Virus record (IMG/VR): IMGVR_UViG_3300034682_000176
Location: 160,811-224,810 of that record
Direction: 5' to 3' (one strand)
DNA length: 64,000 nucleotides
How positions within the stretch are numbered: the first letter of the stretch is position 1; each line of letters opens with the position of its first letter. This document shows positions 6,896 through 37,468 of the stretch, piece by piece. The notes under the pieces are model-generated. The model saw nothing but the letters and a program-made list of their open reading frames with translations, searched no databases and was not told where the DNA came from. The translations under genes and the position numbers were made by a program.

Positions 6896-9328
6896 ATGAC
6901 AACCTTGAACCCCCAACCCATCAGCCAAGATGTCTTGGCAGAGAAGTACCTGGCCGCAGGTGAAACCACTGCCGAAGATCTGTTCCGTCGTGTGAGTCGC
7001 GCACTGGCTGCTCAAGAAAATCCAGCAATCCAAGCTGAGTGGGAAGAGCGCTTTTTCAAGAACATGCAAACTGGTGCTATCGGTGCTGGTCGCATCATGG
7101 CCGCTGCTGGGTTGGACACCAAAGCCACGCTGATCAACTGCTTTGTGCAGCCTGTGGCTGATGCCACCAACGGCTACGACGAAGATGGCAACCCTGGCAT
7201 CTACGTGGCCCTGGCACAAGCAGCCGAGACCATGCGCCGCGGTGGTGGTGTGGGGTACGACTTCTCCAACCTGCGTCCCAAGAACTCCATGGTCAAGGGC
7301 ACCAACTCGTTCGCCTCGGGTCCCTGCTCGTTCATCAACGTGTTCGACGCTTCGTGCACAACGGTGGAATCGGCCGGCGCGCGCCGTGGTGCCCAAATGG
7401 GTGTACTGCGCATCGACCATCCAGACATCTTGGATTTCATCACCGCCAAGCGTGAAAAGGGTCGCTGGAATAACTTCAACGTCTCGGTGGGTGTGACCAC
7501 GGCTTTCATGCAGGCTGTGGAAAACAACCAGTCCTGGGATCTGGTGCATCCGGCTGAGCCTTCGCAAGGCCAAAAGGACGGCGGCGCTTACCAACGTGAA
7601 GACGGCGTGTGGGTGTACCGCACTGTGCAAGCGCAGGATCTGTGGAAGACCATCATGAAGTCGGCCTACGATTTCGCTGAGCCCGGCATCCTGTTCCTGG
7701 ACAACATCAACGACGACAACAACCTGCACTACGCCGAGAAGATTGCTGCCACGAATCCTTGCGGTGAGCAACCCCTGCCTGCGTACGGCTGCTGTGACCT
7801 GGGTCCGATCATTCTGACCAAGTTCGTTCGCCATCCCTTCACCCCTGAAGCTTACTTTGACTCCAAGGCCTTCGTCGAGGCTGTTGGTATCCAAGTGCGC
7901 ATGCTGGACAACGTGCTCGATGCCACCGTCTGGCCACTGCCAGAGCAGCACCGCGAATCGCAAAGCAAGCGTCGCATTGGTGTGGGCTTTACCGGTCTGG
8001 GTGACACCCTGATCATGCTGGGTCTGAAGTACAACAGCCCGGAAGGTGTGAGCATGGGTGAGTTGATCGCGTGTCAAATGCGCGATGCGGCTTACACAGC
8101 TTCGGTACAACTGGCCGTCGAAAAGGGTCCCTTCCCGCTGTTCAATGCTGACCAGTATCTGGAAAGCGGTTTCACCAAGCGCCTGCCAGAAGAAATCCGT
8201 GATTCGATCCGTAAGTACGGTATCCGCAACAGCCACCTGTTGTCGATCGCTCCTACTGGCACGGTGTCGCTGGCTTTTGCTGACAACGCCTCCAACGGCA
8301 TTGAACCACCCTTCTCGTGGACCTACAACCGCAAGAAGCGTACCGTCGACGGCGGCAGTGCCCACTACACCGTGGAAGACCACGCCTACCGTGTTTTCAA
8401 GTCCATGTTTGGTGAGGATGCGCCTCTGCCCGAGAGCTTCGTCAGCGCCATGGACATGACTGCCACCGAACACGTCGCCATGATGCGTGCCGTGCAGCCG
8501 TACATCGATACGGCCATCTCCAAGACCGTGAATGTGCCTGCGGACTACCCGTTCGAGGACTTCATGAACCTGTACATGGAAAGCTGGAAGGCCGGCCTCA
8601 AGGGTTGTGCGACGTACCGTCCCAACGACACGCTGGGTGCTGTGCTGTCCGTGCAAGAACCTGCCAAGCCTGCTGAAACGCCAGCGGCTCCTGCTCCTGC
8701 TCCAACACCCGTGGCTGCTACCCCAACCCCCGTGGCTGCTGCTGTGGGTTCGTTGATGGTGGAACGTCGCCCTGAAGGTCCTCTGGACGCGGTGGTGGAC
8801 AAGATCGAGTACTACGCCCATGACGGCGCACGTCGCTTGTACCTGGTGGTGAGCTTCATGAACGTCAACGGTGTGGAACGTCCGATCGAGTTCTTCATGC
8901 CTGTCGGCCAGACTGGTGAAAGCCAGCAATGGATCACCGCGGCCATGCGTTCGCTGTCGTTGGCTGCCCGTGGTGGTTTCCTGGAGAAAGCTCTGGAAGA
9001 CCTGCGCAAGGTGGCTTGGGACCGCGGCGCCATCCGTTACGGTTGGCACACCAAGGACGACGGCTCGCGCGTGCCTCTGTGGCATGAAAGCGAAGTTGCT
9101 CTGATGGCCTATGCCATCCAATCCATCATCAAGTCCCGTGCCGAGCAATCGGTCGAGCACATCTACCAAACCGGAAAGGGCGTCACTGCCTATGCCGATA
9201 GTGTCCTCAAGGACGTACAACAAAAGGCCACTGGCAAGAAGTGTCCAGACTGCGGTGCGCCATCCCTGATCAAGAAAGATGGCTGCACGTTCTGCGAATC
9301 CTGCGGCTACCTGGGTAGCTGCGGCTAA
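6896..9328 (+). CDS. nrdJ: Class II adenosylcobalamin-dependent ribonucleotide reductase
   Basis: TLINCFV, GGGVGYDFS, TNPCGEQPL radical Cys motif, IAPTGT, AISKTVN; Pro/Ala linker, C-terminal domain and CPDC..CESC Zn ribbon. Confidence 0.93.
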   Translation: MTTLNPQPISQDVLAEKYLAAGETTAEDLFRRVSRALAAQENPAIQAEWEERFFKNMQTGAIGAGRIMAAAGLDTKATLINCFVQPVADATNGYDEDGNPGIYVALAQAAETMRRGGGVGYDFSNLRPKNSMVKGTNSFASGPCSFINVFDASCTTVESAGARRGAQMGVLRIDHPDILDFITAKREKGRWNNFNVSVGVTTAFMQAVENNQSWDLVHPAEPSQGQKDGGAYQREDGVWVYRTVQAQDLWKTIMKSAYDFAEPGILFLDNINDDNNLHYAEKIAATNPCGEQPLPAYGCCDLGPIILTKFVRHPFTPEAYFDSKAFVEAVGIQVRMLDNVLDATVWPLPEQHRESQSKRRIGVGFTGLGDTLIMLGLKYNSPEGVSMGELIACQMRDAAYTASVQLAVEKGPFPLFNADQYLESGFTKRLPEEIRDSIRKYGIRNSHLLSIAPTGTVSLAFADNASNGIEPPFSWTYNRKKRTVDGGSAHYTVEDHAYRVFKSMFGEDAPLPESFVSAMDMTATEHVAMMRAVQPYIDTAISKTVNVPADYPFEDFMNLYMESWKAGLKGCATYRPNDTLGAVLSVQEPAKPAETPAAPAPAPTPVAATPTPVAAAVGSLMVERRPEGPLDAVVDKIEYYAHDGARRLYLVVSFMNVNGVERPIEFFMPVGQTGESQQWITAAMRSLSLAARGGFLEKALEDLRKVAWDRGAIRYGWHTKDDGSRVPLWHESEVALMAYAIQSIIKSRAEQSVEHIYQTGKGVTAYADSVLKDVQQKATGKKCPDCGAPSLIKKDGCTFCESCGYLGSCG

Positions 9329-10507: not shown

Positions 10508-10930
10508 ATGACTAAGTTCCGTGTTTGGCTGTACTCGTTGTTTGAGCCTGTCCTGCTCAACTTTCTGATGCTGACCTTTCCTGGTGTCCGCCAGGATACG
10601 GTCCACTCTCTGATCACAGGGGCATCGGAAGAGCCTGAGCAAAAACCACGTGGTGGTGATTTGCAATCGATCTACAACAACGCTCGCAATCCGCAAGCGT
10701 CGTTTCGGATCTTTCACCTGCGGGTCAAGTACTTTGGATGGGATATCAACCACGCGTTGAAAACACCGGATCGCAAAGATGAGATCCGTGTGGCTGGGTA
10801 CGTCTACAATCTGCGGGAAATTTTCAACAACGCTCCCATGAAGAAGATCAGCTACCACACGTTCCACCGACGTGTGACTCAACAAGGCTGGGACCCTCGT
10901 AAGGCGTTGGAAACTCCTCCAAACAAGTAA
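10508..10930 (+). CDS. RV..GWD..A.TP module protein (2 modules), putative nucleic-acid binding
   Basis: SFRIFHLRVKYFGWDINHALKTP and SYHTFHRRVTQQGWDPRKALETP; AAGGAA RBS. Confidence 0.8.
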   Translation: MTKFRVWLYSLFEPVLLNFLMLTFPGVRQDTVHSLITGASEEPEQKPRGGDLQSIYNNARNPQASFRIFHLRVKYFGWDINHALKTPDRKDEIRVAGYVYNLREIFNNAPMKKISYHTFHRRVTQQGWDPRKALETPPNK

Positions 10931-12303: not shown

Positions 12304-13926
12304 TTATGCCGTCATGAAAGCCAAAGTGGCATCCAAGATGTCGGTGCTGTTGCTGAAACGGATCTTGCGTTCGTTGTCCAGGTAGTAGGCTTTGTTTTTC
12401 AAAAGCTTGCGCACCTCTTCGATGGCTTCGTCCGACAGCACAGCTTGCAGCGACATGGTGTCACCGTCAAAGTCAGCACCTAGCAAAGCCATGTGAGACT
12501 GGTGAACGATCAAGCCGTTCACAAATGTGCTGTCCTTGTCGGGGAAGCTATGAAGCACTTCATCCGTGGGGTTCCACTGTTCATCCAGCTCCCGCACTTG
12601 CTTGTACTTGACTGTGGTGAACAGCTTCATGAACGCCGGGTAGATACCACCATAACCCTGGATGGGGTAGCGGGTCACAAACCCTGGCAACTTGCCGGAC
12701 AAGCGCGCCACACTCAGGTACAGCAGTTCCGTCATGGTGATCGGGGCTACGTGCTTTTTGTCCAAGTGTGCTGGCAGGTCACGGATGTCCTGGAAGAACT
12801 TCACGTACTTGCCGTCGTTGTACAGCAGTCCCATGCAGTGCTTGGAGCGGTTGGTAAACACGGGCAGGTGACGAGTGTCTTGCCGTGCGAAGTTGGCAAT
12901 CACGGTCTCCAAGCCGTCGGTGGTCATCCAGCGATCGTAGTCCTTTTGGACGTGGCTGTTGAGGACTTCTTCCTTTTGCCAGGTCTTGAGGTTGGTCATG
13001 TAGGCAAAGGTGTTGTTCTCGCTGAACACCTGTTGCACATAACGGGTACGGATCTCGAACAACGTCTTAGGAGACGCGGCACGCAAGAACTGGTGCAGAC
13101 CGACACCGATGTCGTTCATACAGACCCGGTTGGGGTCAGAGATGTGGGTGGGCTCGTTGACCGAAGCCGTGATCACGTTTCGGGTCGAGTTGAACGTCTT
13201 GCGACTGAGCCACTTCCCCAGGATCAGTTTGTGCTTGCCTTCCAGCAGGCTTTGGATGTAGTCGTACAGCTCCAGAATACTCTTTTGCAGGTTGCTGTAG
13301 ACATTGTCGTAGGAGTAAGGTGTGCGTCGTGCGATGTCGGCATCCACCAGCTGAGACTGCGCAAGGATGCGGCGGTAGAAGGTGTTGACTTCATCTTCTT
13401 CCGGCTTACCGTTCGGGCTGATGGTGTAGTCCCGCAAACCGGCCGGCATGACCAACATGTAGCGCAGCAAGTGCTTGTCCTCACCGACGGCCTTGTTGAA
13501 GAACTTGATGTTCTCGGTACGCTTGTCTGAAGCATTGGACTCAAAGCTCAAATCCGCCACGTGCTTCAAAAAGAACGTGTAGCCAGTTTGTGCGGTGGGT
13601 TCGTTGCTCTTTTCAAACTGACGCAGTTTGGGATTCCAGATGGCGGAGATCGAGCCATCCATGATGCCTTTGTAAAAAGACTTCAAGGTGATGATGGTCT
13701 TGTACACCAAGGGGTGCAAGATGGGGTAGCGCAGATCGATGTAGCCAAACATGCGGGTGCGATGCTCGCTGCCAATCGGACCAAAGATCTGGGTCGAGAA
13801 CAAACCATCTTGGTGGAAGTTGCTACCCTGACCAAAGATCTGCAGCTCCTTGATCTGACCCAAGCGCGATAGGTCAGAATCCTTGACACGCAACAGCGCG
13901 ATGTTAACCGGTGGGAGTGAAGACAT
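12304..13926 (-). CDS. Virion RNA polymerase beta' N-terminal subunit (phiKZ gp180-like)
   Basis: GLFSTQIFG, VMPAGLRD, TRYP and catalytic GADFDGD motif; 540 aa. Confidence 0.9.
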   Translation of the reverse strand: MSSLPPVNIALLRVKDSDLSRLGQIKELQIFGQGSNFHQDGLFSTQIFGPIGSEHRTRMFGYIDLRYPILHPLVYKTIITLKSFYKGIMDGSISAIWNPKLRQFEKSNEPTAQTGYTFFLKHVADLSFESNASDKRTENIKFFNKAVGEDKHLLRYMLVMPAGLRDYTISPNGKPEEDEVNTFYRRILAQSQLVDADIARRTPYSYDNVYSNLQKSILELYDYIQSLLEGKHKLILGKWLSRKTFNSTRNVITASVNEPTHISDPNRVCMNDIGVGLHQFLRAASPKTLFEIRTRYVQQVFSENNTFAYMTNLKTWQKEEVLNSHVQKDYDRWMTTDGLETVIANFARQDTRHLPVFTNRSKHCMGLLYNDGKYVKFFQDIRDLPAHLDKKHVAPITMTELLYLSVARLSGKLPGFVTRYPIQGYGGIYPAFMKLFTTVKYKQVRELDEQWNPTDEVLHSFPDKDSTFVNGLIVHQSHMALLGADFDGDTMSLQAVLSDEAIEEVRKLLKNKAYYLDNERKIRFSNSTDILDATLAFMTA

Positions 13927-13956
13927 GTCGAAGCTCTCAAGATAGGATTAAAGGGT

Positions 13957-13965
13957 TCACAAAAT
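13957..13965 (-). promoter_or_regulatory. Putative late promoter ATnnTnTGA
   Basis: attttgtga about 30 nt upstream of the vRNAP beta' start. Confidence 0.5.
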
Positions 13966-14069
13966 CTAACCGACAGTGTGGTAAGACAAGTCAGGACTTG
14001 TCGAAGTGCTATTGTTTTTTCAAAATTATTGTACCTCTATGATGGGAGACTCGTTTGACCTGTATTTGG

Positions 14070-14080
14070 TTACATATATA
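14070..14080 (+). promoter_or_regulatory. Putative early promoter TTACATATATA
   Basis: Recurrent motif at the head of the module-protein operon. Confidence 0.65.
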
Positions 14081-14130
14081 GATCACGATGCGTACTGTCA
14101 ACCACAACCTTTCACGGAAGGAACCTCTCT

Positions 14131-14310
14131 ATGTCTTCTACCACCACCGTCCCAGCCGCTTCCGGCTCTCAAGCGCTCAGCGCCTACGAAACCCTCTACC
14201 AACTCCATGTAGAGAAACCGCAACCTTCAGCGGAACCCAAAAACGTTGCGGCGACCCAACAGCCGCGCGCCGTCCTGCGTCGTCGCTATCGTCGTACGGT
14301 GACCCGCTAA
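14131..14310 (+). CDS. 59-aa peptide with Arg-rich C-terminus (not in ORF track)
   Basis: GGAAGGAA RBS; MSSTTTVPAASGSQALSAYETLYQLHVEKPQPSAEPKNVAATQQPRAVLRRRYRRTVTR*. Confidence 0.65.
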   Translation: MSSTTTVPAASGSQALSAYETLYQLHVEKPQPSAEPKNVAATQQPRAVLRRRYRRTVTR

Positions 14311-14338
14311 TTCCTGGGGATGTAATTCCTATAGCAAC

Positions 14339-14540
14339 ATAACCTATCAGTAAGCCTCAGGACTCTTGTCCGGGCTGTGATATCACGCTGCGTTTAACAC
14401 GCAGACCACATTGACAGTACGCGCACCGGGGTGCTTGACTCTTACGCAGGTCTGCACCCCACCCATCACAATCGAGCATCCGTATAGCGACTATGTCGGT
14501 CGTCGGAGTCTAGGTTGTTTCACTGTTTAGAGGGCAGTGA
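14339..14540 (+). ncRNA. Candidate structured RNA / cis-regulatory element
   Basis: Closing stem 14339-14346/14511-14518 encloses at least five helices; followed by the tcactg/cagtga hairpin. Confidence 0.5.
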
Positions 14541-14568
14541 GCCGTTAGTAACAAAAAGGAGTATCAAC

Positions 14569-15327
14569 GTGAGAGCACCGGTTAATCAAGAGCTGATTAA
14601 AAGCTATCATCAATTCAACACCAAGAACGTGCCGCTGAGCGTGTTCTTGATGCGTGTCAACAATCTGCGCTGGGACGTCAAAAGAGCTGGCGAAACCCCT
14701 TACGTACCACGAACGGGCGGGCTTGTTGCACAATACAAAGAACTCTACGATCGCATCGAATCTCCAACTGTGGGGTTCGATGTGTTCTGCCGCCGAATGC
14801 GCAACGGCCGTGATGTCGAAGAAGCAGCCAAAGCTCCGAAGATTGAACCTTCTGAGCTGTACAGCTACTACCACCAATACCAAGACAAACCAGCGGTAGG
14901 GTACACCACCTTCTTTAACCGCGTGGTGTCTTTGAATTGGGAGCGCATCAAAGCCATCACCACACCACCGACGCGCAAAATGAAACCGCGCAAAGAGGTA
15001 CGTTCCAACACGTACCTGGCCATGTGGTTCAACAAAAACATTGAACGCGCCAAAGTCGATTGGAGCTGTTTTTCCCAACGTGTCTTCAAAGGCGGGTGGG
15101 ACAAAGAAAGAGCTCTGACGACACCTTCCATGGCCGAGAATGAATCTCAGCTGCGCGCCTTCTACAACCAACACCCTGACTGTCCAGTCAACTACATGAC
15201 GTTCCACCGTCGTGTGTATGCCCTGGGGTGGGATATGCAGCGTGCAATCTCTACCCCAGTTCGTGACAACACCCGTTCGCAGCGTGAGCGCGTCGTTGTG
15301 AGTTCCCGACCATCCAAGTACAACTAA
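14569..15327 (+). CDS. Tandem module protein (5 modules), putative DNA/RNA binding
   Basis: AAAAGGAG RBS with GTG start; five V.[FYW]..F..R[VM]...[W]D...A..TP units. Confidence 0.85.
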   Translation: MRAPVNQELIKSYHQFNTKNVPLSVFLMRVNNLRWDVKRAGETPYVPRTGGLVAQYKELYDRIESPTVGFDVFCRRMRNGRDVEEAAKAPKIEPSELYSYYHQYQDKPAVGYTTFFNRVVSLNWERIKAITTPPTRKMKPRKEVRSNTYLAMWFNKNIERAKVDWSCFSQRVFKGGWDKERALTTPSMAENESQLRAFYNQHPDCPVNYMTFHRRVYALGWDMQRAISTPVRDNTRSQRERVVVSSRPSKYN

Positions 15328-15350
15328 TCCACCCCGTAAAGCGTATAGTC

Positions 15351-15818
15351 ATGACCACTACTTTGCGTATTTTGAAGACCGCTCCTTACATCACACCCAT
15401 CGAACAACTGTTGCGTGAGTATCAAGAATTTGCCAACCTGAGTCTTCCCAAAGACGTCTACATCAGCCGTGGTGGTGTTCAAGCCAAAACACCTCAGTTG
15501 AGTGCTGCCAGCTACATCCCTGACAGTCTGGAAGACCGTTCGCTACTCAAGCAGTTTGAACAGATCGAAGGACGTGTCGTAGATTTTGGCACCTTCCGCC
15601 GCCGTGTGCGCGGCGGTATGGAAACCATGCCAGCAGCCAAGACTCCGCTGCGCAAACGCAATCGTTCGTCCTACCAGAGCCACAACAAAAGTGGCATTCG
15701 TCTGGCGTACGAGCATGCTCCATCGACTCCGGCCGTTCCATTCAGCACGTACTACGTGCGTGTGAAAGTGCTGAGCTGGCCTATCCAAAAAGCTCTGTAC
15801 ACCCCTTTGCATCATTGA
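15351..15818 (+). CDS. Tandem module protein (2 modules plus 1 degenerate)
   Basis: VDFGTFRRRVRGGME..AAKTP; VPFSTYYVRVKVLSWPIQKALYTP. Confidence 0.8.
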   Translation: MTTTLRILKTAPYITPIEQLLREYQEFANLSLPKDVYISRGGVQAKTPQLSAASYIPDSLEDRSLLKQFEQIEGRVVDFGTFRRRVRGGMETMPAAKTPLRKRNRSSYQSHNKSGIRLAYEHAPSTPAVPFSTYYVRVKVLSWPIQKALYTPLHH

Positions 15819-15834
15819 CCCCTTTGTTTTTGAA

Positions 15835-16182
15835 ATGAGTATGTTGGACCAACCCACACCACAAATCGACAAGACCACTTTTAAGTCTCCGAAAGACATT
15901 CGGGAACAACTGGAGCAAATCTATCGTGACCATCCCAATCCACCGATTCCATACTCGGTGTTTTACTCGCGTGTGCAGTACCTGGGTTGGGACGTCATCA
16001 GTGCGTTGACCACGGCCATTGCCAAGGAGTTCAGCCATCGCCCACGTGGCGAGATCCGTCAGTTCTACGACGACAATGTAGCGCGCGCTCAAGTCAACCT
16101 GAACGTATACAACGGTCGGGTGCGTATGGGTGGTTGGGACAAAGAAAAAGCGTTGACGACACCTGTTGGCGCTCGTGCTTGA
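15835..16182 (+). CDS. Tandem module protein (2 modules)
   Basis: IPYSVFYSRVQYLGWDVISALTT; VNLNVYNGRVRMGGWDKEKALTTP. Confidence 0.8.
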   Translation: MSMLDQPTPQIDKTTFKSPKDIREQLEQIYRDHPNPPIPYSVFYSRVQYLGWDVISALTTAIAKEFSHRPRGEIRQFYDDNVARAQVNLNVYNGRVRMGGWDKEKALTTPVGARA

Positions 16183-16200
16183 TATAAAAAGGAGTTTCAG

Positions 16201-17202
16201 ATGAGTCAGAAAAAACCATCTCAGTACAACCGTGATGAGTTGATCAACTACTACAACAAAGTAGACAACCCAGCGGTACCGCTGGGTCGCTTCTTGCAAC
16301 GGGTCAGCCAAAGCGGCTGGACCTTGGAGCGTGCAGCCACTGCTACGGCTTACCGCAGCGGTGGTACTGCCCACCGCTGTACCGAGTACTACAACGCAGT
16401 TCCTCCAGAGGAGCGCGGTGTGACGTTCGATACGTTCTACAGCCGTGTGATGCGGGGGTGGGACATGCACCGCGCTGCCCGTGAAAAGCCACGGGAAAAA
16501 GCAGCACCCTACCGTGAGTTCTACGACAAACACCCCAACCCCCAAGTGGACTTCGCCATTTTTTATGTGCGGGTCCACTCCAACAATTGGGAACTAGAGC
16601 GCGCCATTACCACACCGGTCGTACCTATGGCCGATGGTCGTGACTGGTGCCAGGAACGGGTGTTCTACGAAGCCAACCGCCATCGCGCCAAGGTTGATCT
16701 GGCCTTGTTCCACAACCGCGTGAAAATGCGCAAGTGGGACATGGAAACTGCATTGGTCACACCGAAGCGTGACAGCGCAACGCGAAACGAAAGCCTGCGC
16801 AGCTACTTTGACAACCACCCCAATCCACAAGTCAGCTACAAGACTTTTGTCAGCCGTGCGGGTCGTGGTGGTTGGACCAAAGAGTCAGCCATCACAGCCC
16901 AGCCACGTCCAGTGACAGCCCGTCGTAACGGCGCCAAGTCGGACATGCCTTTGACACCTCGTCAGCAACGCTTTGCCGATGCGCGGGAGTTCTTCAAAGA
17001 GCACAAGGACTTGGCGGTTGTGGATGTGCAAACGTTCTTGCGTCGTGTGTGTTCAGACAACTGGGACCCAATGCAGGCCATCACTACCGAACTGGCGGAC
17101 ACCAAACCCACACGGGCTGAAACTGGTGCAATGACCAATTCGTTGCAATCGGCATTCATGAACTTCTGTCGTCCGGCTGTGTCGTCATCAGCTCACTCAT
17201 AA
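16201..17202 (+). CDS. Tandem module protein (6 modules)
   Basis: AAAAGGAGTTTCAG RBS; six modules, e.g. VDFAIFYVRVHSNNWELERAITTP. Confidence 0.85.
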   Translation: MSQKKPSQYNRDELINYYNKVDNPAVPLGRFLQRVSQSGWTLERAATATAYRSGGTAHRCTEYYNAVPPEERGVTFDTFYSRVMRGWDMHRAAREKPREKAAPYREFYDKHPNPQVDFAIFYVRVHSNNWELERAITTPVVPMADGRDWCQERVFYEANRHRAKVDLALFHNRVKMRKWDMETALVTPKRDSATRNESLRSYFDNHPNPQVSYKTFVSRAGRGGWTKESAITAQPRPVTARRNGAKSDMPLTPRQQRFADAREFFKEHKDLAVVDVQTFLRRVCSDNWDPMQAITTELADTKPTRAETGAMTNSLQSAFMNFCRPAVSSSAHS

Positions 17203-17278
17203 TTGACTGTCAGCCATCTAAGCGTCCTCACGGATGCTTAGATGGTTTGATGTCACATTTGACTAAGGGGTATTTTTT

Positions 17279-20200
17279 ATGGCCGGAAAGAAAACTAAAA
17301 AGGACGGGGTCGACGAGTTGGATTTTGGTGATCTTGACGATCTGGATATGGATGAGGTCAATTTTGACGATTCCAGTCTTGATGATCCCGACCGCGCTCC
17401 GTCTCGTTCTGAAGTTGCCAAGGACATGGCCAAACAAGCCAGCACAGGCTTTGTGGAATCCATGGCCAAGAAGACAGCAGAAAAGGCACTGCCGCCGGAG
17501 TACGCCAGCAACTATAGCGATGTCATGGACCTGGCAGGATTTGCCACTGACGTCGTGGATCGCAATAAGCAGCAGCTGGACAAATCCATGTTCAAGCTGG
17601 GCAAAGAAGTCAAGAAGCTGTTGCCCATGCAAATTGGGTTGCTGGACAAATACCTCGCCAAAAAGGAAGAGGAGTTTGCCGAGTTCAAACAGCAGTCCGA
17701 AGAAGAGATGCGCAATGCCTCGATTTCTTCGGAGCTCAGCTCGATCTTTGACCAACAGCTCGATATCCAAAAGGCACTGGAAGCTAAGCGTTCTGCAGAG
17801 GGTCGCGTTGAGACCAAAGAGCGCCTGATCGCTACCAAGCTCAATTTGGATGTACTGCGTAGCATCGATGCCAATGTGGCAACCAGTGCTGCGTTTGAGA
17901 CGCAAATCTCCAAGCAGTTCTTCCGCAAGTCGTTGGAGTTGCAGTACAAGTCGTTCTTCGTGCAAGCAGACATGCTGCGCACGATGCGGGACAGCTACAA
18001 GGGCTTTACGCTGTTGTTGACCAACATCGAAAAGAACTCGGCGCTGCCTGACTACGTCAAACTCAAGAACACTGAGCGACTGGCTGACATTGCTCGCACC
18101 AACGCGACACAAGCGGTATATTCCCAATTGTTCAGCCGCAACAAGTACATCCAAACAGTCAAGGACCGTTTAGGGCGTGCTGTCAACGACAAGGTCACAT
18201 CGATCACCGACTCCATGGGAGACATCACTGATGCCCTGTCGATGATGAACGATGGTGGCAAAGGTGCGGGTTTGCGTGCACTGGGTGGTATTGCTGCTGG
18301 TATTGGTGGTGACACTTTGGGTGAGATGGCAGGTACTCGCTTGGGAGGTAAACTGCAAGAGCGCTTGAAGGACAACAAGTATCTCAACACCGGCGCCAAC
18401 TACCTCAAAGCCTTTGCAGCTTCTCCAGCCACGCTGATGCGGTCTTTGCGCGACAAGGCGGCCGAGCGTGAACAAGAAGCGGAAGGCCGTGGCAGCTGGA
18501 GCTCTAAGCTGTACGGCATGGCCCGTGCAGGTTTGGATTTGACAGCCGAAGATCGTCCTAACATCGGTGTCAAACGGGACAATTACCTGGACCACAACCA
18601 GCCAGCCATCTTTGACAACAAGGCGCACCGTTCGATCACGGAAGCCATTCCCATGCTGCTGTCGCGTATCTTGCAAAAGAACAGCGACATGAACCAGATG
18701 TACTACCAGGCTAACCAACACATCGTTAGCCCACCCAACTCACCGTTGCTGATGTACGACTACCAAGGTCGTAAGCTGGACAGCGGCGAAAGCATCAAAG
18801 CCAAACTGCAAGACAGTGTGTTCTCCCAGCGTTCGACCAAGAACCGCACGACGGCCATTGCCTCGAACACGCTGACCAAGTCCAAGGCCAACATCTCCCG
18901 CAATACGGCGATGACCAAGGACCAAAAGAAACAGCTCAACGCCACCTTGAACGCCAAAGGCGCGCAAGACGCATTGGCTGAGTACTACGCCCGAGCATCG
19001 TCGATCAAGGGGATCAACCTCGATCACGACACACTCATCGTCAATGCCGGTAAGAACAAAGACTTGGCGGCCTTGATCAACGCTAACCCTCAACTTGCAA
19101 AGGTCATTGATGTACTTCGCCAAAATTCAGACAAAGACAATTCATACATCGACCAAAGCCTTGCTGACGTCCAGAACCCTTATCCTATCGAGGCGATTAA
19201 AAACCTCTTTACAGATTCCTCGAAACTCACCAGTGCCAAGCAACCTAACCTTGTCACGGACAAAAACGCAAACGCCATCTCCAAAGCGCTGAGTCGTTTC
19301 ATCCTCAACCGTGGTGAAGACATCACGGCCAACAACATCTTGTCGCGGCTGGCATTCAGCTACTTCCGACCTGATGAGTTCAATGAGCAAGTCAAGCAAA
19401 ACATCGCGGTGTTGATCGACGATGTCAAACGCATCACCTCGCACGGCGATATCGTTTTGCAAAGCTCACTGATGGCCTTGTTGGCACTGGTCAACCAGTC
19501 GCTCAAAGCCAACTTCGAGATTGACCCTGCGGTCTTTAGCAATATCCGCGAACTGTACCCCGACTTTGTCAAGCAGTCCCGACTGACCATTGAAAATCTG
19601 GCCGAAGGCAAGATAGATGCTGGTGTCGACGAGTACATGAACTTCATGGACATCAAGGACGCTACCAAGGTGTCTAACCGCGAAGTCGGTTTGATTCGTG
19701 AGCAGGTGTTTGCGACTTCTGGGGTTGATCGCATTCTCTCTCGCGCCAAGAGCAAGGGTGAAGAGTTCAAGAAAGGACTCACAGCGGCCAGCAGTTCTCC
19801 GACAGCCATGGCTGAGTTCCTGCTGCAACAAGCCAAGAGCTTCAAGTCAACGGTCGCCGCCTCGCTGACCAAGACGTCCAATGAAATCCAGCAAGGATTT
19901 ACCAAGCTGGGTAACCACGTCGATACCTTGGTCAAGGAAGGTTCTGCCAAAGCCCTGGGGTTGATGGTCCAAGAACTCTCTGCCCTGGATCAAAAACTGG
20001 AAAACTACATCGTGCTGACACAGAACGATTTGGCCCAGCGTACTGAAGAGCTGCAAAACGCCAAAGACAGCGTGGTTGAAGTCACTACCCAAACCAAGCT
20101 GCAGCGTGCCGCCACCCGTGAACTTGAACTGTTTGTGCGCATGGGGGAGAAGAACCTCAACGCACTGGTCAAGCTGCGCGAGACCGTCCAACGCAACACC

Positions 20201-20362
20201 CAGTCCATCCGCCAGATGGCACAAAACCCAACCACTCCTCCAACCGAAGCTTTGCGCAAAATGGGCACGGCCATCCGTGACGTGTTGGACCAAGCCAAGA
20301 AACAGTTGGCAGAGCTGGAAGCCGCAGGGGCTTCTGAGCGCGCGGCCGCAGTAGCGGCGTGA
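17279..20362 (+). CDS. Large virion tail protein, N-terminal half of a phiKZ gp181-like tape/needle protein
   Basis: Acidic N-terminus, RKSLELQY, ALPDYVK and FD....RSITE.IP blocks, coiled coils; divergent from the gp180-like gene; atggtttga motif at 17242. Confidence 0.7.
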   Translation: MAGKKTKKDGVDELDFGDLDDLDMDEVNFDDSSLDDPDRAPSRSEVAKDMAKQASTGFVESMAKKTAEKALPPEYASNYSDVMDLAGFATDVVDRNKQQLDKSMFKLGKEVKKLLPMQIGLLDKYLAKKEEEFAEFKQQSEEEMRNASISSELSSIFDQQLDIQKALEAKRSAEGRVETKERLIATKLNLDVLRSIDANVATSAAFETQISKQFFRKSLELQYKSFFVQADMLRTMRDSYKGFTLLLTNIEKNSALPDYVKLKNTERLADIARTNATQAVYSQLFSRNKYIQTVKDRLGRAVNDKVTSITDSMGDITDALSMMNDGGKGAGLRALGGIAAGIGGDTLGEMAGTRLGGKLQERLKDNKYLNTGANYLKAFAASPATLMRSLRDKAAEREQEAEGRGSWSSKLYGMARAGLDLTAEDRPNIGVKRDNYLDHNQPAIFDNKAHRSITEAIPMLLSRILQKNSDMNQMYYQANQHIVSPPNSPLLMYDYQGRKLDSGESIKAKLQDSVFSQRSTKNRTTAIASNTLTKSKANISRNTAMTKDQKKQLNATLNAKGAQDALAEYYARASSIKGINLDHDTLIVNAGKNKDLAALINANPQLAKVIDVLRQNSDKDNSYIDQSLADVQNPYPIEAIKNLFTDSSKLTSAKQPNLVTDKNANAISKALSRFILNRGEDITANNILSRLAFSYFRPDEFNEQVKQNIAVLIDDVKRITSHGDIVLQSSLMALLALVNQSLKANFEIDPAVFSNIRELYPDFVKQSRLTIENLAEGKIDAGVDEYMNFMDIKDATKVSNREVGLIREQVFATSGVDRILSRAKSKGEEFKKGLTAASSSPTAMAEFLLQQAKSFKSTVAASLTKTSNEIQQGFTKLGNHVDTLVKEGSAKALGLMVQELSALDQKLENYIVLTQNDLAQRTEELQNAKDSVVEVTTQTKLQRAATRELELFVRMGEKNLNALVKLRETVQRNTQSIRQMAQNPTTPPTEALRKMGTAIRDVLDQAKKQLAELEAAGASERAAAVAA

Positions 20363-26560: not shown

Positions 26561-26611
26561 CTCCACGACAACAACCGTTTGTTTTTCTGTAACCCTAAAG
26601 GAGTCTCATCC

Positions 26612-27532
26612 ATGGCCATGACTATTTACGCTTGCGGCGGCGCTGGTATCAACGTCGTCAAGCAAATCAAAGACCTGGACATCAACATCAACTACATCGA
26701 CACCTCGGCCAGCAACCTGAAGGCGGTCAAGAGCGAGAACATCTACCTGGTCGAAGACATGGACGGCGCCGGCAAGAACCGCGTGGTGGCGTACGAAAAC
26801 TTCAAGGGCAATGCTGCCGATGTGTTGGTGCGCTTCAAGCCCTCGGAACAGCTGAACATCGTGATCAGCTCGCTGACCGGCGGCTCTGGTGCCATCCTGG
26901 CATCCCTGATCACCAAGGAACTGGTGGACCAAGGCCACAACACCATCGTCATCGGACTGGACTCGGACGGCTCTTTGATCGAGCTGTCCAATTCGGTCAA
27001 GACCCTGAAGACCTACCGCGCCATCAGCAAGCAGATCAGCAAGCCGATTCCGCTGTACTACGTTAACCAAGCCACACGCTCCGACGCCGACCGCCAAGCC
27101 CTGGGTTTCATCACCCTGATGGCGCTGGTGATCGACAAGAAGCGCACGGCTGAGTTCGACAACTCCGATCTGAACTCGTTCCTGTACTTCGACAAGACCA
27201 CGGTCAACGATCCCTCGGTGTCGGTGATCGAAGTCACCCCCAACGAAGAAATCGTGGCCGAAAAGAACACCTCGGTCGTGGGCACGATCTTTGTGACCAC
27301 TTCCAAGGACACCACGATCAAGCCGGTCAAGCCCGAGTACCTGGCCACCTGTCTGGTGACCGACACCGAGTACCAAAACGAGGACTCGCGCATCAACGCC
27401 GTGCTGGGCAAACTGCCGCTGATCATCAGCTCCCTGGAAGCCGACATCAAGGAACTGGAAGACAGCAAGCGCATCAACCGTGTCAACGACGTCGAAGTCC
27501 TGGACTCCAACGCTGACGGCATCGTGATCTAA
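26612..27532 (+). CDS. phuZ: Phage tubulin PhuZ
   Basis: YACGGAGIN, IDTS..N, DGAGKNR, GGSG tubulin signature, acidic tail DSNADGIVI; strong high-expression codon bias. Confidence 0.93.
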   Translation: MAMTIYACGGAGINVVKQIKDLDININYIDTSASNLKAVKSENIYLVEDMDGAGKNRVVAYENFKGNAADVLVRFKPSEQLNIVISSLTGGSGAILASLITKELVDQGHNTIVIGLDSDGSLIELSNSVKTLKTYRAISKQISKPIPLYYVNQATRSDADRQALGFITLMALVIDKKRTAEFDNSDLNSFLYFDKTTVNDPSVSVIEVTPNEEIVAEKNTSVVGTIFVTTSKDTTIKPVKPEYLATCLVTDTEYQNEDSRINAVLGKLPLIISSLEADIKELEDSKRINRVNDVEVLDSNADGIVI

Positions 27533-35617: not shown

Positions 35618-37468
35618 ATGGGTGTCAATCAACAAGCTTTCGCTACTTCCGCAACTGCCGCTGCCGCTGCTCAAACTGCCCAGTCTGCTGGCCGTCCCTC
35701 CAGCTTCACGCCTGGTCAGATGGGTCTGATGTCGCCCGTCGGTTCGGTGGGCTCCGGCGGTGAAATGTACGAGAAGCTGTACGCTGCTCTGCAAAACAAC
35801 GTGAAGATGCTGACCGAAGAGCGCAAGAGCGACTCCAGCTACTTCGTGGTCAAGCTGCTGAAGCAGACCGCCGGTCTGAACTACAGCAACATCATCCTGG
35901 TGGAAAAGCAAGAAGACTGCGTGGCCGCTCACGTGCTGATCGTCGAATCCACCGGCATGTACCCCGATGTGCGCATCGAGACCGCTGGCAACGTCCGCTA
36001 CGAAATCGTCCGCACTCCTGCTGACGCGCTGGACGAAAAGCTGGTGGAACAAGCGCAGATCGCCGTGGGCCAGGCGCTGAAGATGAACCCTGCGGAAGTC
36101 GTCATCGTCGACGGCACGCTGGTGCCTTCCGAATTCGCCGTCAGCGACGAACACCAAGTCAGCGCCCTGGTCATCAACACCTTCAACGCCACGTTCACCG
36201 AAATCCAAACCCGCGTGCACGACTACAAGGGCCAGAACGTCCAGGAACTGATCGCCAACAACCGCAACGGCAAGTTCCAGATCGGCGTGGCCTACAACGA
36301 GAACGATCTGATCTTCACGGACCAGACCGGCATGCCTGTTCGCCAGGACATCTGCATCTCGCTGTCCTACAAGCTGGGCAACTCCCAGAACGGCTGGTCG
36401 GTGCACCAAGGTGAAAACACGGTGGAAGTGGCCAAGACCTACGGCTACATCGACTTCGAGTACGTCGGCCCTCAGCTGGTGAACAACCAGCCTACCAGCC
36501 AGTGCTTCGTGCCCAACTTCATCATCACGCACATCGAAAGCCCCTTCGCTCCCACCCCTGACCTGGTGATGCGCGCAGTGCTGTCGGTGTTCGCGCTGAA
36601 CGAAGGCATGAACTGGCTGCCGGCATTCCGTGCTGCGATGACCAAGAAGGGCGAAATCGACCTGGCAGACATCGGCGCGCTGAACATCGAAGGCAACATC
36701 GAAGCCAACCCCGTGGGCTACGGCAAGAAGTACGACACCAAGTCCAAGAGCTTCAACAACATGGAGCTGACCCAGTTCGTGCAACGCCTGGTCTACCCTG
36801 GCAAGCTGGCTGTGTCGATGGACCTGCCCAAGGCCGGCCCCGAGACCTGGTACACCTCGCTGTTCCACGCGATCCAGTTCGAGCAAAATCCTGCCATCCG
36901 TCAGGGTGCCATGGACCGCCTGAACCGCTTCCTGATCCACTCGACCGGCAACGTGTTCCAGCCTGCCAACCTGCCCGTGTTCATCAACACCACCAACAAG
37001 ATCCACGGCGGCTTCTACCGTGACCCTGTCACCAAGACCTACCGTGATCTGCGTTGTGTGACCAACTACCTGGCCGTGGCCAACCACGTGGCTGACACCA
37101 ACCAGCCACCTGCCAAGATCAGCCAGTACACCAACACGCTGTACAGCCACGCTCTGCCGGCTGAACTGCGCGCTGCTGTGCGCCGCGACCAGTACGTGAC
37201 GGAGATGACCAACAACAGCGCTGTGATCAAGCGCTACTACGACCGCGTGACCTTCTCGCGTGACTACCTGCAGAACTACCTGAATGCGATGCAGTCCATC
37301 GGCTACGCTCCGATGTTCGCCAACATGGTGAACAACGAAGTGTTCGTCACCCGCGCCACCGGCGACTTCGCCAACGCGCTGTTCGGCCAAGACGCTCGTC
37401 TGATGGGCACCGCTCCCACGCAGTACGGCAACTACGGCCAGTTCAGCGCCTACCACCGCACCTACTAA
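35618..37468 (+). CDS. chmA: Chimallin, phage nucleus shell protein
   Basis: 616 aa, Ala/Gln-rich N-tail, D.TGMPVR.DI, GYIDF, P.FIIT, DIGALN and GY-rich C-tail; extreme codon bias; upstream of nvRNAP beta'-N as for phiKZ gp54/gp55. Confidence 0.85.
   Translation: MGVNQQAFATSATAAAAAQTAQSAGRPSSFTPGQMGLMSPVGSVGSGGEMYEKLYAALQNNVKMLTEERKSDSSYFVVKLLKQTAGLNYSNIILVEKQEDCVAAHVLIVESTGMYPDVRIETAGNVRYEIVRTPADALDEKLVEQAQIAVGQALKMNPAEVVIVDGTLVPSEFAVSDEHQVSALVINTFNATFTEIQTRVHDYKGQNVQELIANNRNGKFQIGVAYNENDLIFTDQTGMPVRQDICISLSYKLGNSQNGWSVHQGENTVEVAKTYGYIDFEYVGPQLVNNQPTSQCFVPNFIITHIESPFAPTPDLVMRAVLSVFALNEGMNWLPAFRAAMTKKGEIDLADIGALNIEGNIEANPVGYGKKYDTKSKSFNNMELTQFVQRLVYPGKLAVSMDLPKAGPETWYTSLFHAIQFEQNPAIRQGAMDRLNRFLIHSTGNVFQPANLPVFINTTNKIHGGFYRDPVTKTYRDLRCVTNYLAVANHVADTNQPPAKISQYTNTLYSHALPAELRAAVRRDQYVTEMTNNSAVIKRYYDRVTFSRDYLQNYLNAMQSIGYAPMFANMVNNEVFVTRATGDFANALFGQDARLMGTAPTQYGNYGQFSAYHRTY

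What the first reader, a model, noticed from the sequence alone, without database searches (positions are those of the whole stretch)
14569..17202. Four-gene cluster of 'polydactyl' proteins built from a ~45-aa module with a hypervariable putative recognition helix
Seen: four adjacent genes contain 5, 2(+1 degenerate), 2 and 6 copies of the module L-x2-[FY]-Y-x3-(P)-x2-V-x-[FYWL]-x-x-F-x-x-R-V-x2-3-G-W-D-x-E-x-A-x-T-T-P, joined by variable, often basic linkers and with no catalytic domain. Scaffold residues (V, F, R, W, A, TP) are largely conserved, while the residues between them differ in nearly every copy: LSVFLMR, FDVFCRR, YTTFFNR, WSCFSQR, YMTFHRR, FGTFRRR, FSTYYVR, YSVFYSR, LNVYNGR, LGRFLQR, FDTFYSR, FAIFYVR, LALFHNR, YKTFVSR, VQTFLRR. 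Known: single 'R...GW..E.A..TP' HTH-like motifs occur in phage and HNH-associated proteins. Inference: strung in arrays, they could read long sequences module by module like C2H2 zinc-finger arrays, giving a modular phage DNA/RNA-recognition system for regulation, host takeover or genome organisation in the phage nucleus.
Basis: partly seen in the sequence, partly recalled or inferred. Interest (0 to 1): 0.82.

Follow-up and report, generated by a model that had tools for sequence, protein, structure and literature searches.

The report
Early-operon tandem helix-turn-helix array proteins
A nucleus-forming jumbo phage carries an apparently early-expressed operon of four small basic proteins made only of repeated three-helix DNA-binding-type modules; they belong to a widespread, catalogued but unstudied phage family, so they are real and probably bind DNA, but a zinc-finger-like "reading code" is not shown.

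Summary
Four adjacent + strand genes (14569-17202) hold 5, 2, 2 and 6 copies of a ~45-aa module. A fifth gene with 2 copies lies at 10508-10930. The genes are under purifying selection (dN/dS 0.10-0.15), basic (pI 9.6-10.1) and have no enzymatic domain. AlphaFold2 gives each module three helices (pLDDT 92).

The family is not new. The proteins match phrog_1065 (E 1e-30). A module profile finds 2,182 protein clusters, mostly arrays. Relatives match Pfam PVL_ORF50 and classical HTH models, and some are fused to GIY-YIG, T5orf172 or DUF2726 nucleases or a helicase.

HTH models in relatives align so that module helix 2 is the recognition helix. Its paralog-variable positions are better conserved between orthologous modules (83%) than other variable positions (62%, p 1e-4).

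The operon follows an AT-rich motif that also precedes PhuZ, chimallin and RNA polymerase genes, so early expression is likely. It ends at a conserved hairpin.

Best reading: early-made, multi-module DNA-binding proteins with module-specific surfaces. DNA binding, targets and a module-by-module code remain untested. Interest is moderate.

The parts
14071..14087 (+). Promoter-like motif TACATATATA-(6N)-G upstream of the operon; predicted start G at 14087
   Evidence: There are 9 matches in the window (8 on the + strand) against 0.69 expected. All nine + strand CATATATA sites have G seven bases after the motif. The other copies precede PhuZ, chimallin and two RNA polymerase genes. The motif lies in a 155-nt block (13987-14141) that is at least 97% identical in the ortholog locus L001. 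It resembles the AT-rich virion-RNAP early promoters of phiKZ-like phages, which have a start 6 nt downstream (PMC5312081).
14131..14310 (+). orf59, a small basic ORF at the head of the operon
   Evidence: It is conserved in L001 (71% aa, dN/dS 0.29, pI 10.9). It has no module and no family hit.
14569..15327 (+). g1, 252 aa, 5 modules
   Evidence: Modules lie at 14575-14709, 14716-14847 (W replaced by R), 14839-14976, 14998-15135 and 15133-15267. phrog_1065 E 6.9e-30. dN/dS 0.146, pI 9.9. Five-module orthologs P0006, P0007 and P0010 keep the module order.
15351..15818 (+). g2, 155 aa, 2 modules after a 58-aa N-terminal part that may be a degenerate copy
   Evidence: Modules lie at 15525-15659 (W replaced by M) and 15678-15815. 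dN/dS 0.123, pI 10.1. The N-terminal part gave no HMM hit.
15835..16182 (+). g3, 115 aa (113 if it starts at the ATG at 15841, which is the one conserved in L001), 2 modules
   Evidence: Modules lie at 15892-16026 and 16036-16173. The AlphaFold2 model of residues 17-115 has pLDDT 92.4 and three helices per module. dN/dS 0.105. Start-codon comparison.
16201..17202 (+). g4, 333 aa, 6 modules plus a C-terminal tail of about 33 aa
   Evidence: Modules lie at 16222-16356, 16360-16497, 16492-16626, 16636-16773, 16777-16911 and 16963-17100. phrog_1065 E 2.5e-32 and phrog_3377 'HNH endonuclease' C-terminal part E 2.7e-8. Orthologs at 93% and 68% identity. dN/dS 0.135. g4 is in the same frame as g3, 18 nt after its stop, and has its own AAAAGGAG ribosome-binding site.
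17214..17245 (+). Hairpin (14-bp stem, 4-nt loop) followed by TTTGATGT; likely end of the operon
   Evidence: Read directly from the sequence. It is conserved in L001, with a C-to-T change that keeps a wobble pair and a TTCG loop. The terminator scan did not report it.
10508..10930 (+). g0, a fifth family member (140 aa): hydrophobic N-terminal segment plus 2 modules
   Evidence: Modules lie at 10643-10777 and 10793-10927. The L001 ortholog is 74% identical, dN/dS 0.127, pI 9.9. The N-terminal 19-residue hydropathy maximum is 1.54, which is borderline for a membrane segment.

Best explanation
The locus is an operon of a nucleus-forming (chimallin/PhuZ-encoding) jumbo phage. It runs from a promoter-like motif at 14071, through orf59 and g1-g4, to a hairpin at 17214-17245, and is probably transcribed early by the virion RNA polymerase.

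It makes four soluble, basic proteins with no enzymatic domain. Each is a string of 2-6 three-helix modules of the phrog_1065 / PVL_ORF50-like helix-turn-helix superfamily. Other phages attach this same module to homing-type nucleases and helicases as a DNA-targeting part.

The most likely mechanism is that each module places helix 2 (the F-x-x-R-V helix) against DNA. The invariant Arg and aromatic residues form the common scaffold and contact surface. The module-specific exposed residues of helix 2 give each position in the array its own preference. A 5- or 6-module protein would then occupy an extended, composite site on phage or host DNA early in infection, acting in regulation, occlusion or organisation.

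Shown here: the genes, the repeats, purifying selection, family membership, the three-helix prediction, and the ortholog-specific conservation of helix 2.

Inferred: early timing, DNA binding, helix 2 as the contact helix, and any sequence selectivity.
For: Real genes: dN/dS is 0.10-0.15, the same as the RNA polymerase gene beside them. Natural variants in four runs carry no indels inside the cluster.

Family: phrog_1065 at E 7e-30 and 2.5e-32. The module profile finds 2,182 clusters. Of 151 proteins scanned with the module HMM (150 of them from that search's best list), 91 have at least 5 modules, and the median pI is 9.7. 60 of 135 relatives match PF07768, and others match HTH_psq, HTH_10, HTH_28, NUMOD1 or I-TevI_DNA-bd. 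The nearest ESM Atlas clusters are all of this set.

Fold: pLDDT 92.4, three helices per module. The best matches among viral models are Bacillus phage 'transcriptional regulatory', PVL ORF-50-like and HTH homing endonuclease proteins.

DNA link: relatives are fused to GIY-YIG plus I-HmuI/I-TevI DNA-binding parts, T5orf172, DUF2726 and an SF2 helicase.

Helix 2 as recognition helix: classical HTH models map to module columns about 8-34.

Specificity signature: helix-2 variable columns are 83% identical between orthologs, against 62% for other variable columns (Fisher p 1e-4). Module order is kept by index in orthologs at about 35% identity.

Early timing: the motif is shared with PhuZ, chimallin and RNA polymerase genes and resembles known vRNAP early promoters.
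Against: - No direct Pfam or NCBIfam hit for the window proteins themselves, so the link to PVL_ORF50 and the HTH families is through relatives.
- No solved structure matches by sequence or significantly by fold. The top PDB hit is Ltp at E 3.6, and its HTH repeats are, from my own knowledge, reported to bind a protein rather than DNA.
- The helix 1 to helix 2 loop is 7 residues and Pro-rich, unlike a canonical HTH turn.
- Other surface positions are almost as variable as helix 2.
- Exposed helix-2 residues drift in distant orthologs.
- Conservation of helix 2 could reflect inter-module packing or a protein partner.
- The closest cultured relative (AgentSmith) lacks the cluster, so it is accessory.
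- The RNA-library contigs do not show transcription.
Confidence: 0.55

Rival explanations
1. The proteins are non-specific DNA-coating or nucleoid-associated proteins. Many weakly specific basic modules bind DNA by charge and shape, compacting or shielding phage or host DNA, and the helix-2 differences carry no code.
For: All five proteins have pI 9.6-10.1, and 94% of relatives have pI above 8. The NUMOD-type DNA-binding regions of phage homing endonucleases make sparse, largely non-specific contacts across long sites (PMC3239194). Exposed helix-2 residues drift in distant orthologs.
Against: Helix-2 variable positions are significantly better conserved between orthologous modules than other surface positions. 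Each array position keeps its own signature across orthologs. Neither is expected for purely electrostatic binding.
Confidence: 0.2
2. The proteins are nuclease-less descendants of free-standing homing endonucleases. They would be DNA-binding parts left after loss of the catalytic domain, persisting as selfish remnants or as site-occluding 'immunity' proteins against related endonucleases.
For: The module is the C-terminal part of phrog_3377 HNH endonucleases. It is fused to GIY-YIG, T5orf172 or DUF2726 in relatives. The cluster sits as an insertion between two conserved genes that are adjacent in AgentSmith, the usual kind of site for free-standing endonuclease genes. In L004 the array lies on the other side of the polymerase gene.
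Against: Purifying selection is strong. The 5- and 6-module architectures and the g1-g4 order are kept in several diverged phages, and the genes sit in a regular operon. This points to a host-phage function rather than decay. No nuclease remnant was detected.
Confidence: 0.12
3. The proteins are protein-binding adaptors rather than nucleic-acid binders. The three-helix repeats would grip a protein partner, for example a phage RNA polymerase subunit or a host factor.
For: The top (non-significant) PDB match is Ltp; from my own knowledge its tandem HTH repeats bind a tape measure protein. The arrays lie next to an RNA polymerase beta-prime gene in the window, L001 and L004. g0 has a hydrophobic N-terminus that could anchor modules at a membrane.
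Against: The Ltp match has TM 0.2 and E 3.6. Domain partners in relatives are DNA enzymes. The strongly basic charge fits nucleic acid. AgentSmith has the polymerase but not the arrays.
Confidence: 0.08
4. The proteins are RNA-binding regulators of early transcripts, acting in the cytoplasm on phage or host mRNA.
For: The proteins are basic and probably early. One database record labels a relative 'DNA/RNA-binding 3-helical bundle'.
Against: No relative carries an RNA-related domain. All informative fusions are to DNA nucleases or a helicase. All matching Pfam models are DNA-binding HTH families.
Confidence: 0.05

Closest known systems
phrog_1065 and Pfam PF07768 (PVL ORF-50-like family) phage proteins
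   Same: Same repeated core (V-x-F/Y-x-T-F-x-x-R-V-x2-3-G-W-x-x-E-x-A-x-T-P). Small basic phage proteins with several copies. Multi-gene clusters occur, e.g. Bacillus phage IEBH gp13-gp16.
   Different: The window proteins do not reach any Pfam threshold directly. Their helix 1 to helix 2 link is a Pro-rich loop in place of the 'G-I/V-x' turn seen in relatives. They carry 5-6 copies and sit in a jumbo-phage operon that is probably early. I found no functional study of the family.
NUMOD-type DNA-binding modules of phage homing endonucleases (I-TevI, I-HmuI, I-Bth0305I)
   Same: Short helical or HTH modules strung in series that let a protein follow a long DNA site (PMC3239194). Relatives of the window module co-occur with GIY-YIG, I-HmuI_NUMOD-like and I-TevI_DNA-bd hits, and with the HNH PHROG.
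   Different: No nuclease domain is present here. There is no direct NUMOD1 hit for the window proteins. These are stand-alone arrays under purifying selection.
Eukaryotic tandem HTH readers (Pipsqueak Psq repeats, Myb R1-R2-R3)
   Same: Repeated three-helix units of about 45-50 aa with conserved aromatic core residues. HTH_psq is a frequent Pfam match in relatives (21 of 135).
   Different: The similarity is at motif level only and there is no evidence of common descent. From my own knowledge, those proteins use 2-4 repeats with known DNA motifs. Here there are up to 6 repeats (21 in relatives) with unknown targets.
C2H2 zinc-finger and TALE arrays
   Same: Functional analogy only: a conserved scaffold with variable residues on one helix, repeated many times.
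   Different: Different fold and no metal ligands. No repeat-to-base code has been shown, and linkers vary in length (spacing 42-58 aa).
Ltp superinfection-exclusion protein (PDB 4eqq)
   Same: Tandem three-helix HTH-like repeats in a phage protein; top PDB fold hit.
   Different: The match is not significant (E 3.6, TM 0.2). From my own knowledge, Ltp is an acidic secreted lipoprotein that binds a protein. g1-g4 are basic and have no signal or membrane segment.

Membership tests
phrog_1065 (phage protein family of unknown function) | Significant match to the family profile | tested here: met
   g1 6.9e-30, g4 2.5e-32, g3 7.3e-9, g2 3.2e-4.
Pfam PF07768 PVL_ORF50 | Score above the Pfam gathering threshold (27 bits) | tested here: not met
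   No PF07768 hit for g1-g4 even at E<=1. The link is indirect: 60 of 135 profile-found relatives match it, and the nearest ESM Atlas clusters carry it.
Helix-turn-helix (tri-helical) DNA-binding domains | Three-helix bundle with a helix-turn-helix pair | tested here: inconclusive
   Three helices per module at pLDDT 92. HTH Pfam models map onto helix 1 to helix 2 in relatives. But the connecting loop is 7 residues, and no significant fold match was obtained because only the two-module model could be searched.
Helix-turn-helix (tri-helical) DNA-binding domains | Binds nucleic acid through the second helix of the motif | not testable with these tools
   Only indirect support: basic pI, fusions to DNA enzymes, and ortholog conservation of helix 2.
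HNH endonuclease (the label RefSeq gives to relatives) | HNH / His-Me finger catalytic domain | tested here: not met
   No HNH model hit in g0-g4. Only the non-catalytic C-terminal part of phrog_3377 matches. IEBH gp13 and gp16, labelled HNH endonuclease, also lack it, whereas gp24 has HNH_3.
NUMOD1 / I-TevI DNA-binding domain | Match to PF07453 or PF20987 | tested here: not met
   No hit in the window proteins. Seen in 4 and 3 of 135 relatives.
Modular code readers (zinc-finger or TALE-like) | Each repeat specifies a defined DNA sub-site, and swapping repeats re-programs the target | not testable with these tools
   Needs binding data. Only a specificity-like conservation pattern was seen.
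Chimallivirus (nucleus-forming phiKZ-like phage) genome context | Chimallin shell protein, PhuZ tubulin and split multisubunit RNA polymerases | tested here: met
   phrog_4795 nuclear shell protein 1.2e-51, phrog_4733 PhuZ 5.6e-54, RNA polymerase beta PHROGs, and a beta-prime fragment with 314 jumbo-phage matches.

The most novel reading that the evidence does not exclude
The phrog_1065 / PVL_ORF50-like module is a natural, re-usable DNA-reading unit. Each copy would specify a short sub-site through three to five exposed helix-2 residues. Arrays of 5-21 copies would then address long unique sites, and phages would deploy them both as free regulators or occluders and as the targeting arm of nucleases and helicases. 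The jumbo-phage operon would be a set of four such readers aimed at early-infection targets.
Probability: 0.12. Interest if true: 0.85.

Novelty: new member of a known kind. Interest (0 to 1): 0.45.

Why it matters
If the arrays bind DNA with module-specific preferences, they would be a third natural repeat scaffold for long-site recognition, beside zinc fingers and TALEs. They are small, metal-free and already paired in nature with nucleases.

They would also identify early DNA-binding factors in nucleus-forming phages, where regulation and the handling of host DNA are poorly understood.

As it stands, the finding assigns a probable role to part of a large unannotated phage family. It also shows that some database 'HNH endonuclease' labels in this family mark proteins with no nuclease domain.

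Tried and rejected
- Near-identical and translated searches of 50,697 phage records with the cluster and with g4 found nothing. The phage has no close cultured relative.
- Direct Pfam, NCBIfam and PADLOC scans of g0-g4 gave only sub-threshold noise, including UBA_4, DUF3378, EndoDuHalo and PD-Lambda-2_A at 3.4e-4 with no stretch passing on its own.
- Two module profiles against PDB sequences gave no hit at E<=10. P0068 hit only the GIY-YIG domain.
- Single-sequence AlphaFold2 of g4 was poor (pLDDT 47.5) and was not used.
- Foldseek of the two-module model gave no significant PDB hit.
- RNA-library contigs cover the polymerase gene, the cluster and the flanks alike, so they say nothing about transcription.
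- The conserved upstream region has no Rfam or tRNA match, and its fold is not better than shuffles (z -0.84).
- The sigma-70 promoter scan found none.
- Literature searches for PVL ORF-50, PF07768, tandem HTH arrays and NUMOD repeats found no functional study of this family.
- A hit on 'tandem helix-turn-helix' in an Avs5 paper concerned TPR-like repeats, not this family.
Full report
**1. What is there**

The region holds four adjacent + strand ORFs:
- g1, 14569-15327. It starts at GTG behind AAAAGGAG, and the ortholog has ATG at the aligned place.
- g2, 15351-15818.
- g3, 15835-16182. The ATG at 15841 is the one conserved in the ortholog.
- g4, 16201-17202.

An HMM seeded with nine regex-picked copies recovered six further copies that were not in the seed, with domain E from 1.5e-15 to 2.6e-4. 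That gives 5, 2, 2 and 6 modules.

A six-frame scan of the whole window with the 15-module HMM hit nothing else except two copies at 10658-10921. These belong to a fifth gene, g0 (10508-10930).

The 17 modules share L7, Y/F11, V19, F24, R27 (invariant), V28, G32, W33, A38 (invariant), T41 and P42.

There is no DNA-level tandem repeat, only short matches over the conserved motif. The duplications are therefore old. Its 'degenerate' extra copy in g2 is not statistically detectable.

**2. The genes are real and constrained**

A syntenic 14.3-kb contig (L001) from another sample carries g0, the polymerase gene, orf59, g1-g4 and the next gene in the same order.
- Amino-acid identity is 67-83%.
- dN/dS is 0.10-0.15 for g0-g4, against 0.10 for the RNA polymerase beta-prime fragment beside them.
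- pI is 9.6-10.1.

Variants at 90-99% identity in four further runs have no indels inside the cluster. More distant 5- and 6-module orthologs (P0003-P0007, P0010; loci L004, L005) keep the module order position by position.

**3. Genome context**

The window is from a phiKZ-like, nucleus-forming phage.
- It has a split RNA polymerase beta-prime fragment at 12304-13926 (-). The best cultured match is phage AgentSmith at 51%.
- PhuZ lies at 26579-27532, chimallin at 35618-37468, and further RNA polymerase genes follow.

In AgentSmith the polymerase gene and the homolog of the 1027-aa protein (17279-20362; 31% identity, E 2e-162) are directly adjacent. The 3.35-kb stretch with orf59 and g1-g4 is therefore a lineage-specific insertion.

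**4. Expression signals**

The motif [T/C/A]ACATATATA-(6N)-G occurs nine times on the + strand. A 12-nt version gives 9 matches against 0.69 expected, and all nine + strand sites have the G. The copies precede:
- orf59 and g1-g4 (motif 14071-14080, G at 14087);
- PhuZ;
- the ORF ahead of chimallin;
- two RNA polymerase genes;
- several unknown genes.

Early promoters for the virion RNA polymerase of phiKZ-related phages are extended AT-rich elements, and in two experimentally studied phages the start lies 6 nt downstream (PMC5312081). I therefore infer early expression. This is not shown.

The motif lies in the longest near-identical block between the window and L001 (13987-14141).

After g4 there is a 14-bp hairpin with a tetraloop and then TTTGATGT (17214-17253). 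It is conserved in L001, with a wobble-preserving change and a TTCG loop.

**5. What the module is**

The window proteins give no hit in Pfam or NCBIfam. They do match phrog_1065 (unknown function) at 1e-30 and the non-catalytic C-terminal part of phrog_3377 'HNH endonuclease'.

A profile of the 17 modules, scored against 1.84 billion representative proteins, found 2,182 proteins at E<=1e-3, with up to 21 matched stretches. Of 151 proteins rescanned with the module HMM (150 from that search's best list plus ortholog P0002):
- 91 have at least 5 modules;
- median spacing is 51 aa;
- median pI is 9.7.

Of 135 relatives scanned, 60 match PF07768 PVL_ORF50. Many match HTH_psq, HTH_10, HTH_28, HTH_36 or HTH_23, and a few match NUMOD1 or I-TevI_DNA-bd. 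These are mostly summed weak repeat hits.

Some relatives are fused to other domains:
- GIY-YIG plus I-HmuI/I-TevI DNA-binding parts (P0068);
- T5orf172 (P0077);
- DUF2726 (P0074);
- an SF2 helicase (P0138).

ESM Atlas look-alikes are all of the same PVL_ORF50/HTH set.

In cultured phages, the relatives found with P0108 are mostly from Bacillus phages (19 of 23 matching records). They are labelled 'HNH endonuclease', 'HTH DNA binding' or 'DNA/RNA-binding 3-helical bundle'. IEBH gp13-gp16 is a comparable four-gene cluster without any HNH domain.

**6. Structure**

With a 57-row two-module alignment, AlphaFold2 models g3 at pLDDT 92.4. Each module has helix 1 (the L-x-x-F/Y-Y part), a 7-residue Pro-rich loop, helix 2 (F-x-x-R-V) and a short helix 3 after G-W. 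pTM is 0.55, so the two modules are not fixed relative to each other.

Foldseek found no significant PDB match; the top hit was Ltp 4eqq at E 3.6. Matches to viral models were weak: a Bacillus phage 'transcriptional regulatory protein' at E 3e-3, PVL ORF-50-like proteins and an HTH homing endonuclease.

In relatives, classical HTH models align to module columns about 8-34. Helix 1 then corresponds to the positioning helix and helix 2 to the recognition helix.

**7. Are the variable residues special?**

Among the 17 paralogous modules, the exposed helix-2 columns (22, 25, 26, 29, 30, 31) have 2.6-3.5 bits of entropy. Other surface columns have 2.6-3.3. 'Hypervariable' is therefore too strong.

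Between orthologous modules of the window and L001, these columns are 83% identical (82/99). Other paralog-variable columns are 62% identical (220/353; Fisher p 1e-4), and scaffold columns are 91%. Helix 2 thus carries module-specific constrained residues.

In orthologs at about 35% identity, each array position keeps a recognisable signature, but the most exposed residues drift.

**8. Interpretation**

The evidence fits early-made, enzyme-free, multi-module DNA-binding proteins whose modules are individually specialised. Four things remain untested: DNA binding itself, the targets (phage or host DNA), the location (nucleus or cytoplasm), and any repeat-to-sequence code.

Rivals are non-specific DNA coating, nuclease-less homing-endonuclease derivatives, protein-binding adaptors and RNA binders. 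Each is set out with its evidence in its own section.

The family is catalogued but I found no functional study of it. The finding is a new member of a known, unstudied kind rather than a new kind of system.

Noticed in passing
It has a conserved hydrophobic N-terminal segment (19-residue hydropathy maximum 1.54) that might be a membrane anchor.
   Followed up: partly
window + strand, motif starts 3267, 14071, 26551, 28500, 34918, 38722, 40427, 55713, 60942: The motif [T/C/A]ACATATATA-(6N)-G, usually with TTGA or CTGA about 14-16 nt upstream, precedes PhuZ, chimallin, RNA polymerase genes and the array operon. It is a candidate early (virion RNA polymerase) promoter of this phage.
   Followed up: partly
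window 13987-14141 and about 14420-14545: These non-coding blocks upstream of orf59 and g1 are more conserved between the window and L001 (at least 97% over 155 nt) than most coding DNA. Beyond the promoter motif their role is unknown: no Rfam or tRNA hit, and the fold is not better than shuffles.
   Followed up: partly
window 17214-17253: A conserved 14-bp hairpin with a tetraloop and a T-rich tail follows g4. The terminator scan missed it. L001 has a TTCG loop and a wobble-preserving change.
   Followed up: yes
window 13927-17278 versus L003 (AgentSmith) 8917-8980: The whole orf59 and g1-g4 stretch is absent from the closest cultured relative, where the polymerase gene and the large neighbouring gene are about 60 nt apart. 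In L004 a 6-module array lies on the other side of the polymerase gene.
   Followed up: yes
window 14131-14310 (+): A conserved 59-aa very basic ORF (pI 10.9, dN/dS 0.29) heads the operon. It has no family match.
   Followed up: partly
window 16180-16203: g3 and g4 are in the same frame, separated by one stop and 18 nt that hold a strong ribosome-binding site. L001 has the same layout. Read-through was not examined.
   Followed up: no
L006 (Bacillus phage IEBH) 3947-5921: Four adjacent genes gp13-gp16 carry weak copies of the module and no HNH domain, yet RefSeq names two of them 'HNH endonuclease'. This is probably an annotation carried over from the shared DNA-binding module.
   Followed up: yes
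L008 8001-16258: Two adjacent giant array proteins (1537 aa and 1202 aa, 21 and 10 matched stretches) lie near a large N6/N4 methyltransferase and a ResIII helicase gene. This could be a defence or mobile-element context for the same module.
   Followed up: no
H16-H18 (Vibrio filamentous phages VfO3K6 / f237, Vpf497): A relative of the family (P0108) matches a 497-aa ORF of filamentous Vibrio phages at E 1e-9. This is an unexpected host range for the module.
   Followed up: no
window 14400-17300 in public runs: Near-identical or related sequence is present in subsurface, soil, wastewater, air, freshwater and surface metagenomes, so the phage lineage is widespread. The host is unknown.
   Followed up: partly
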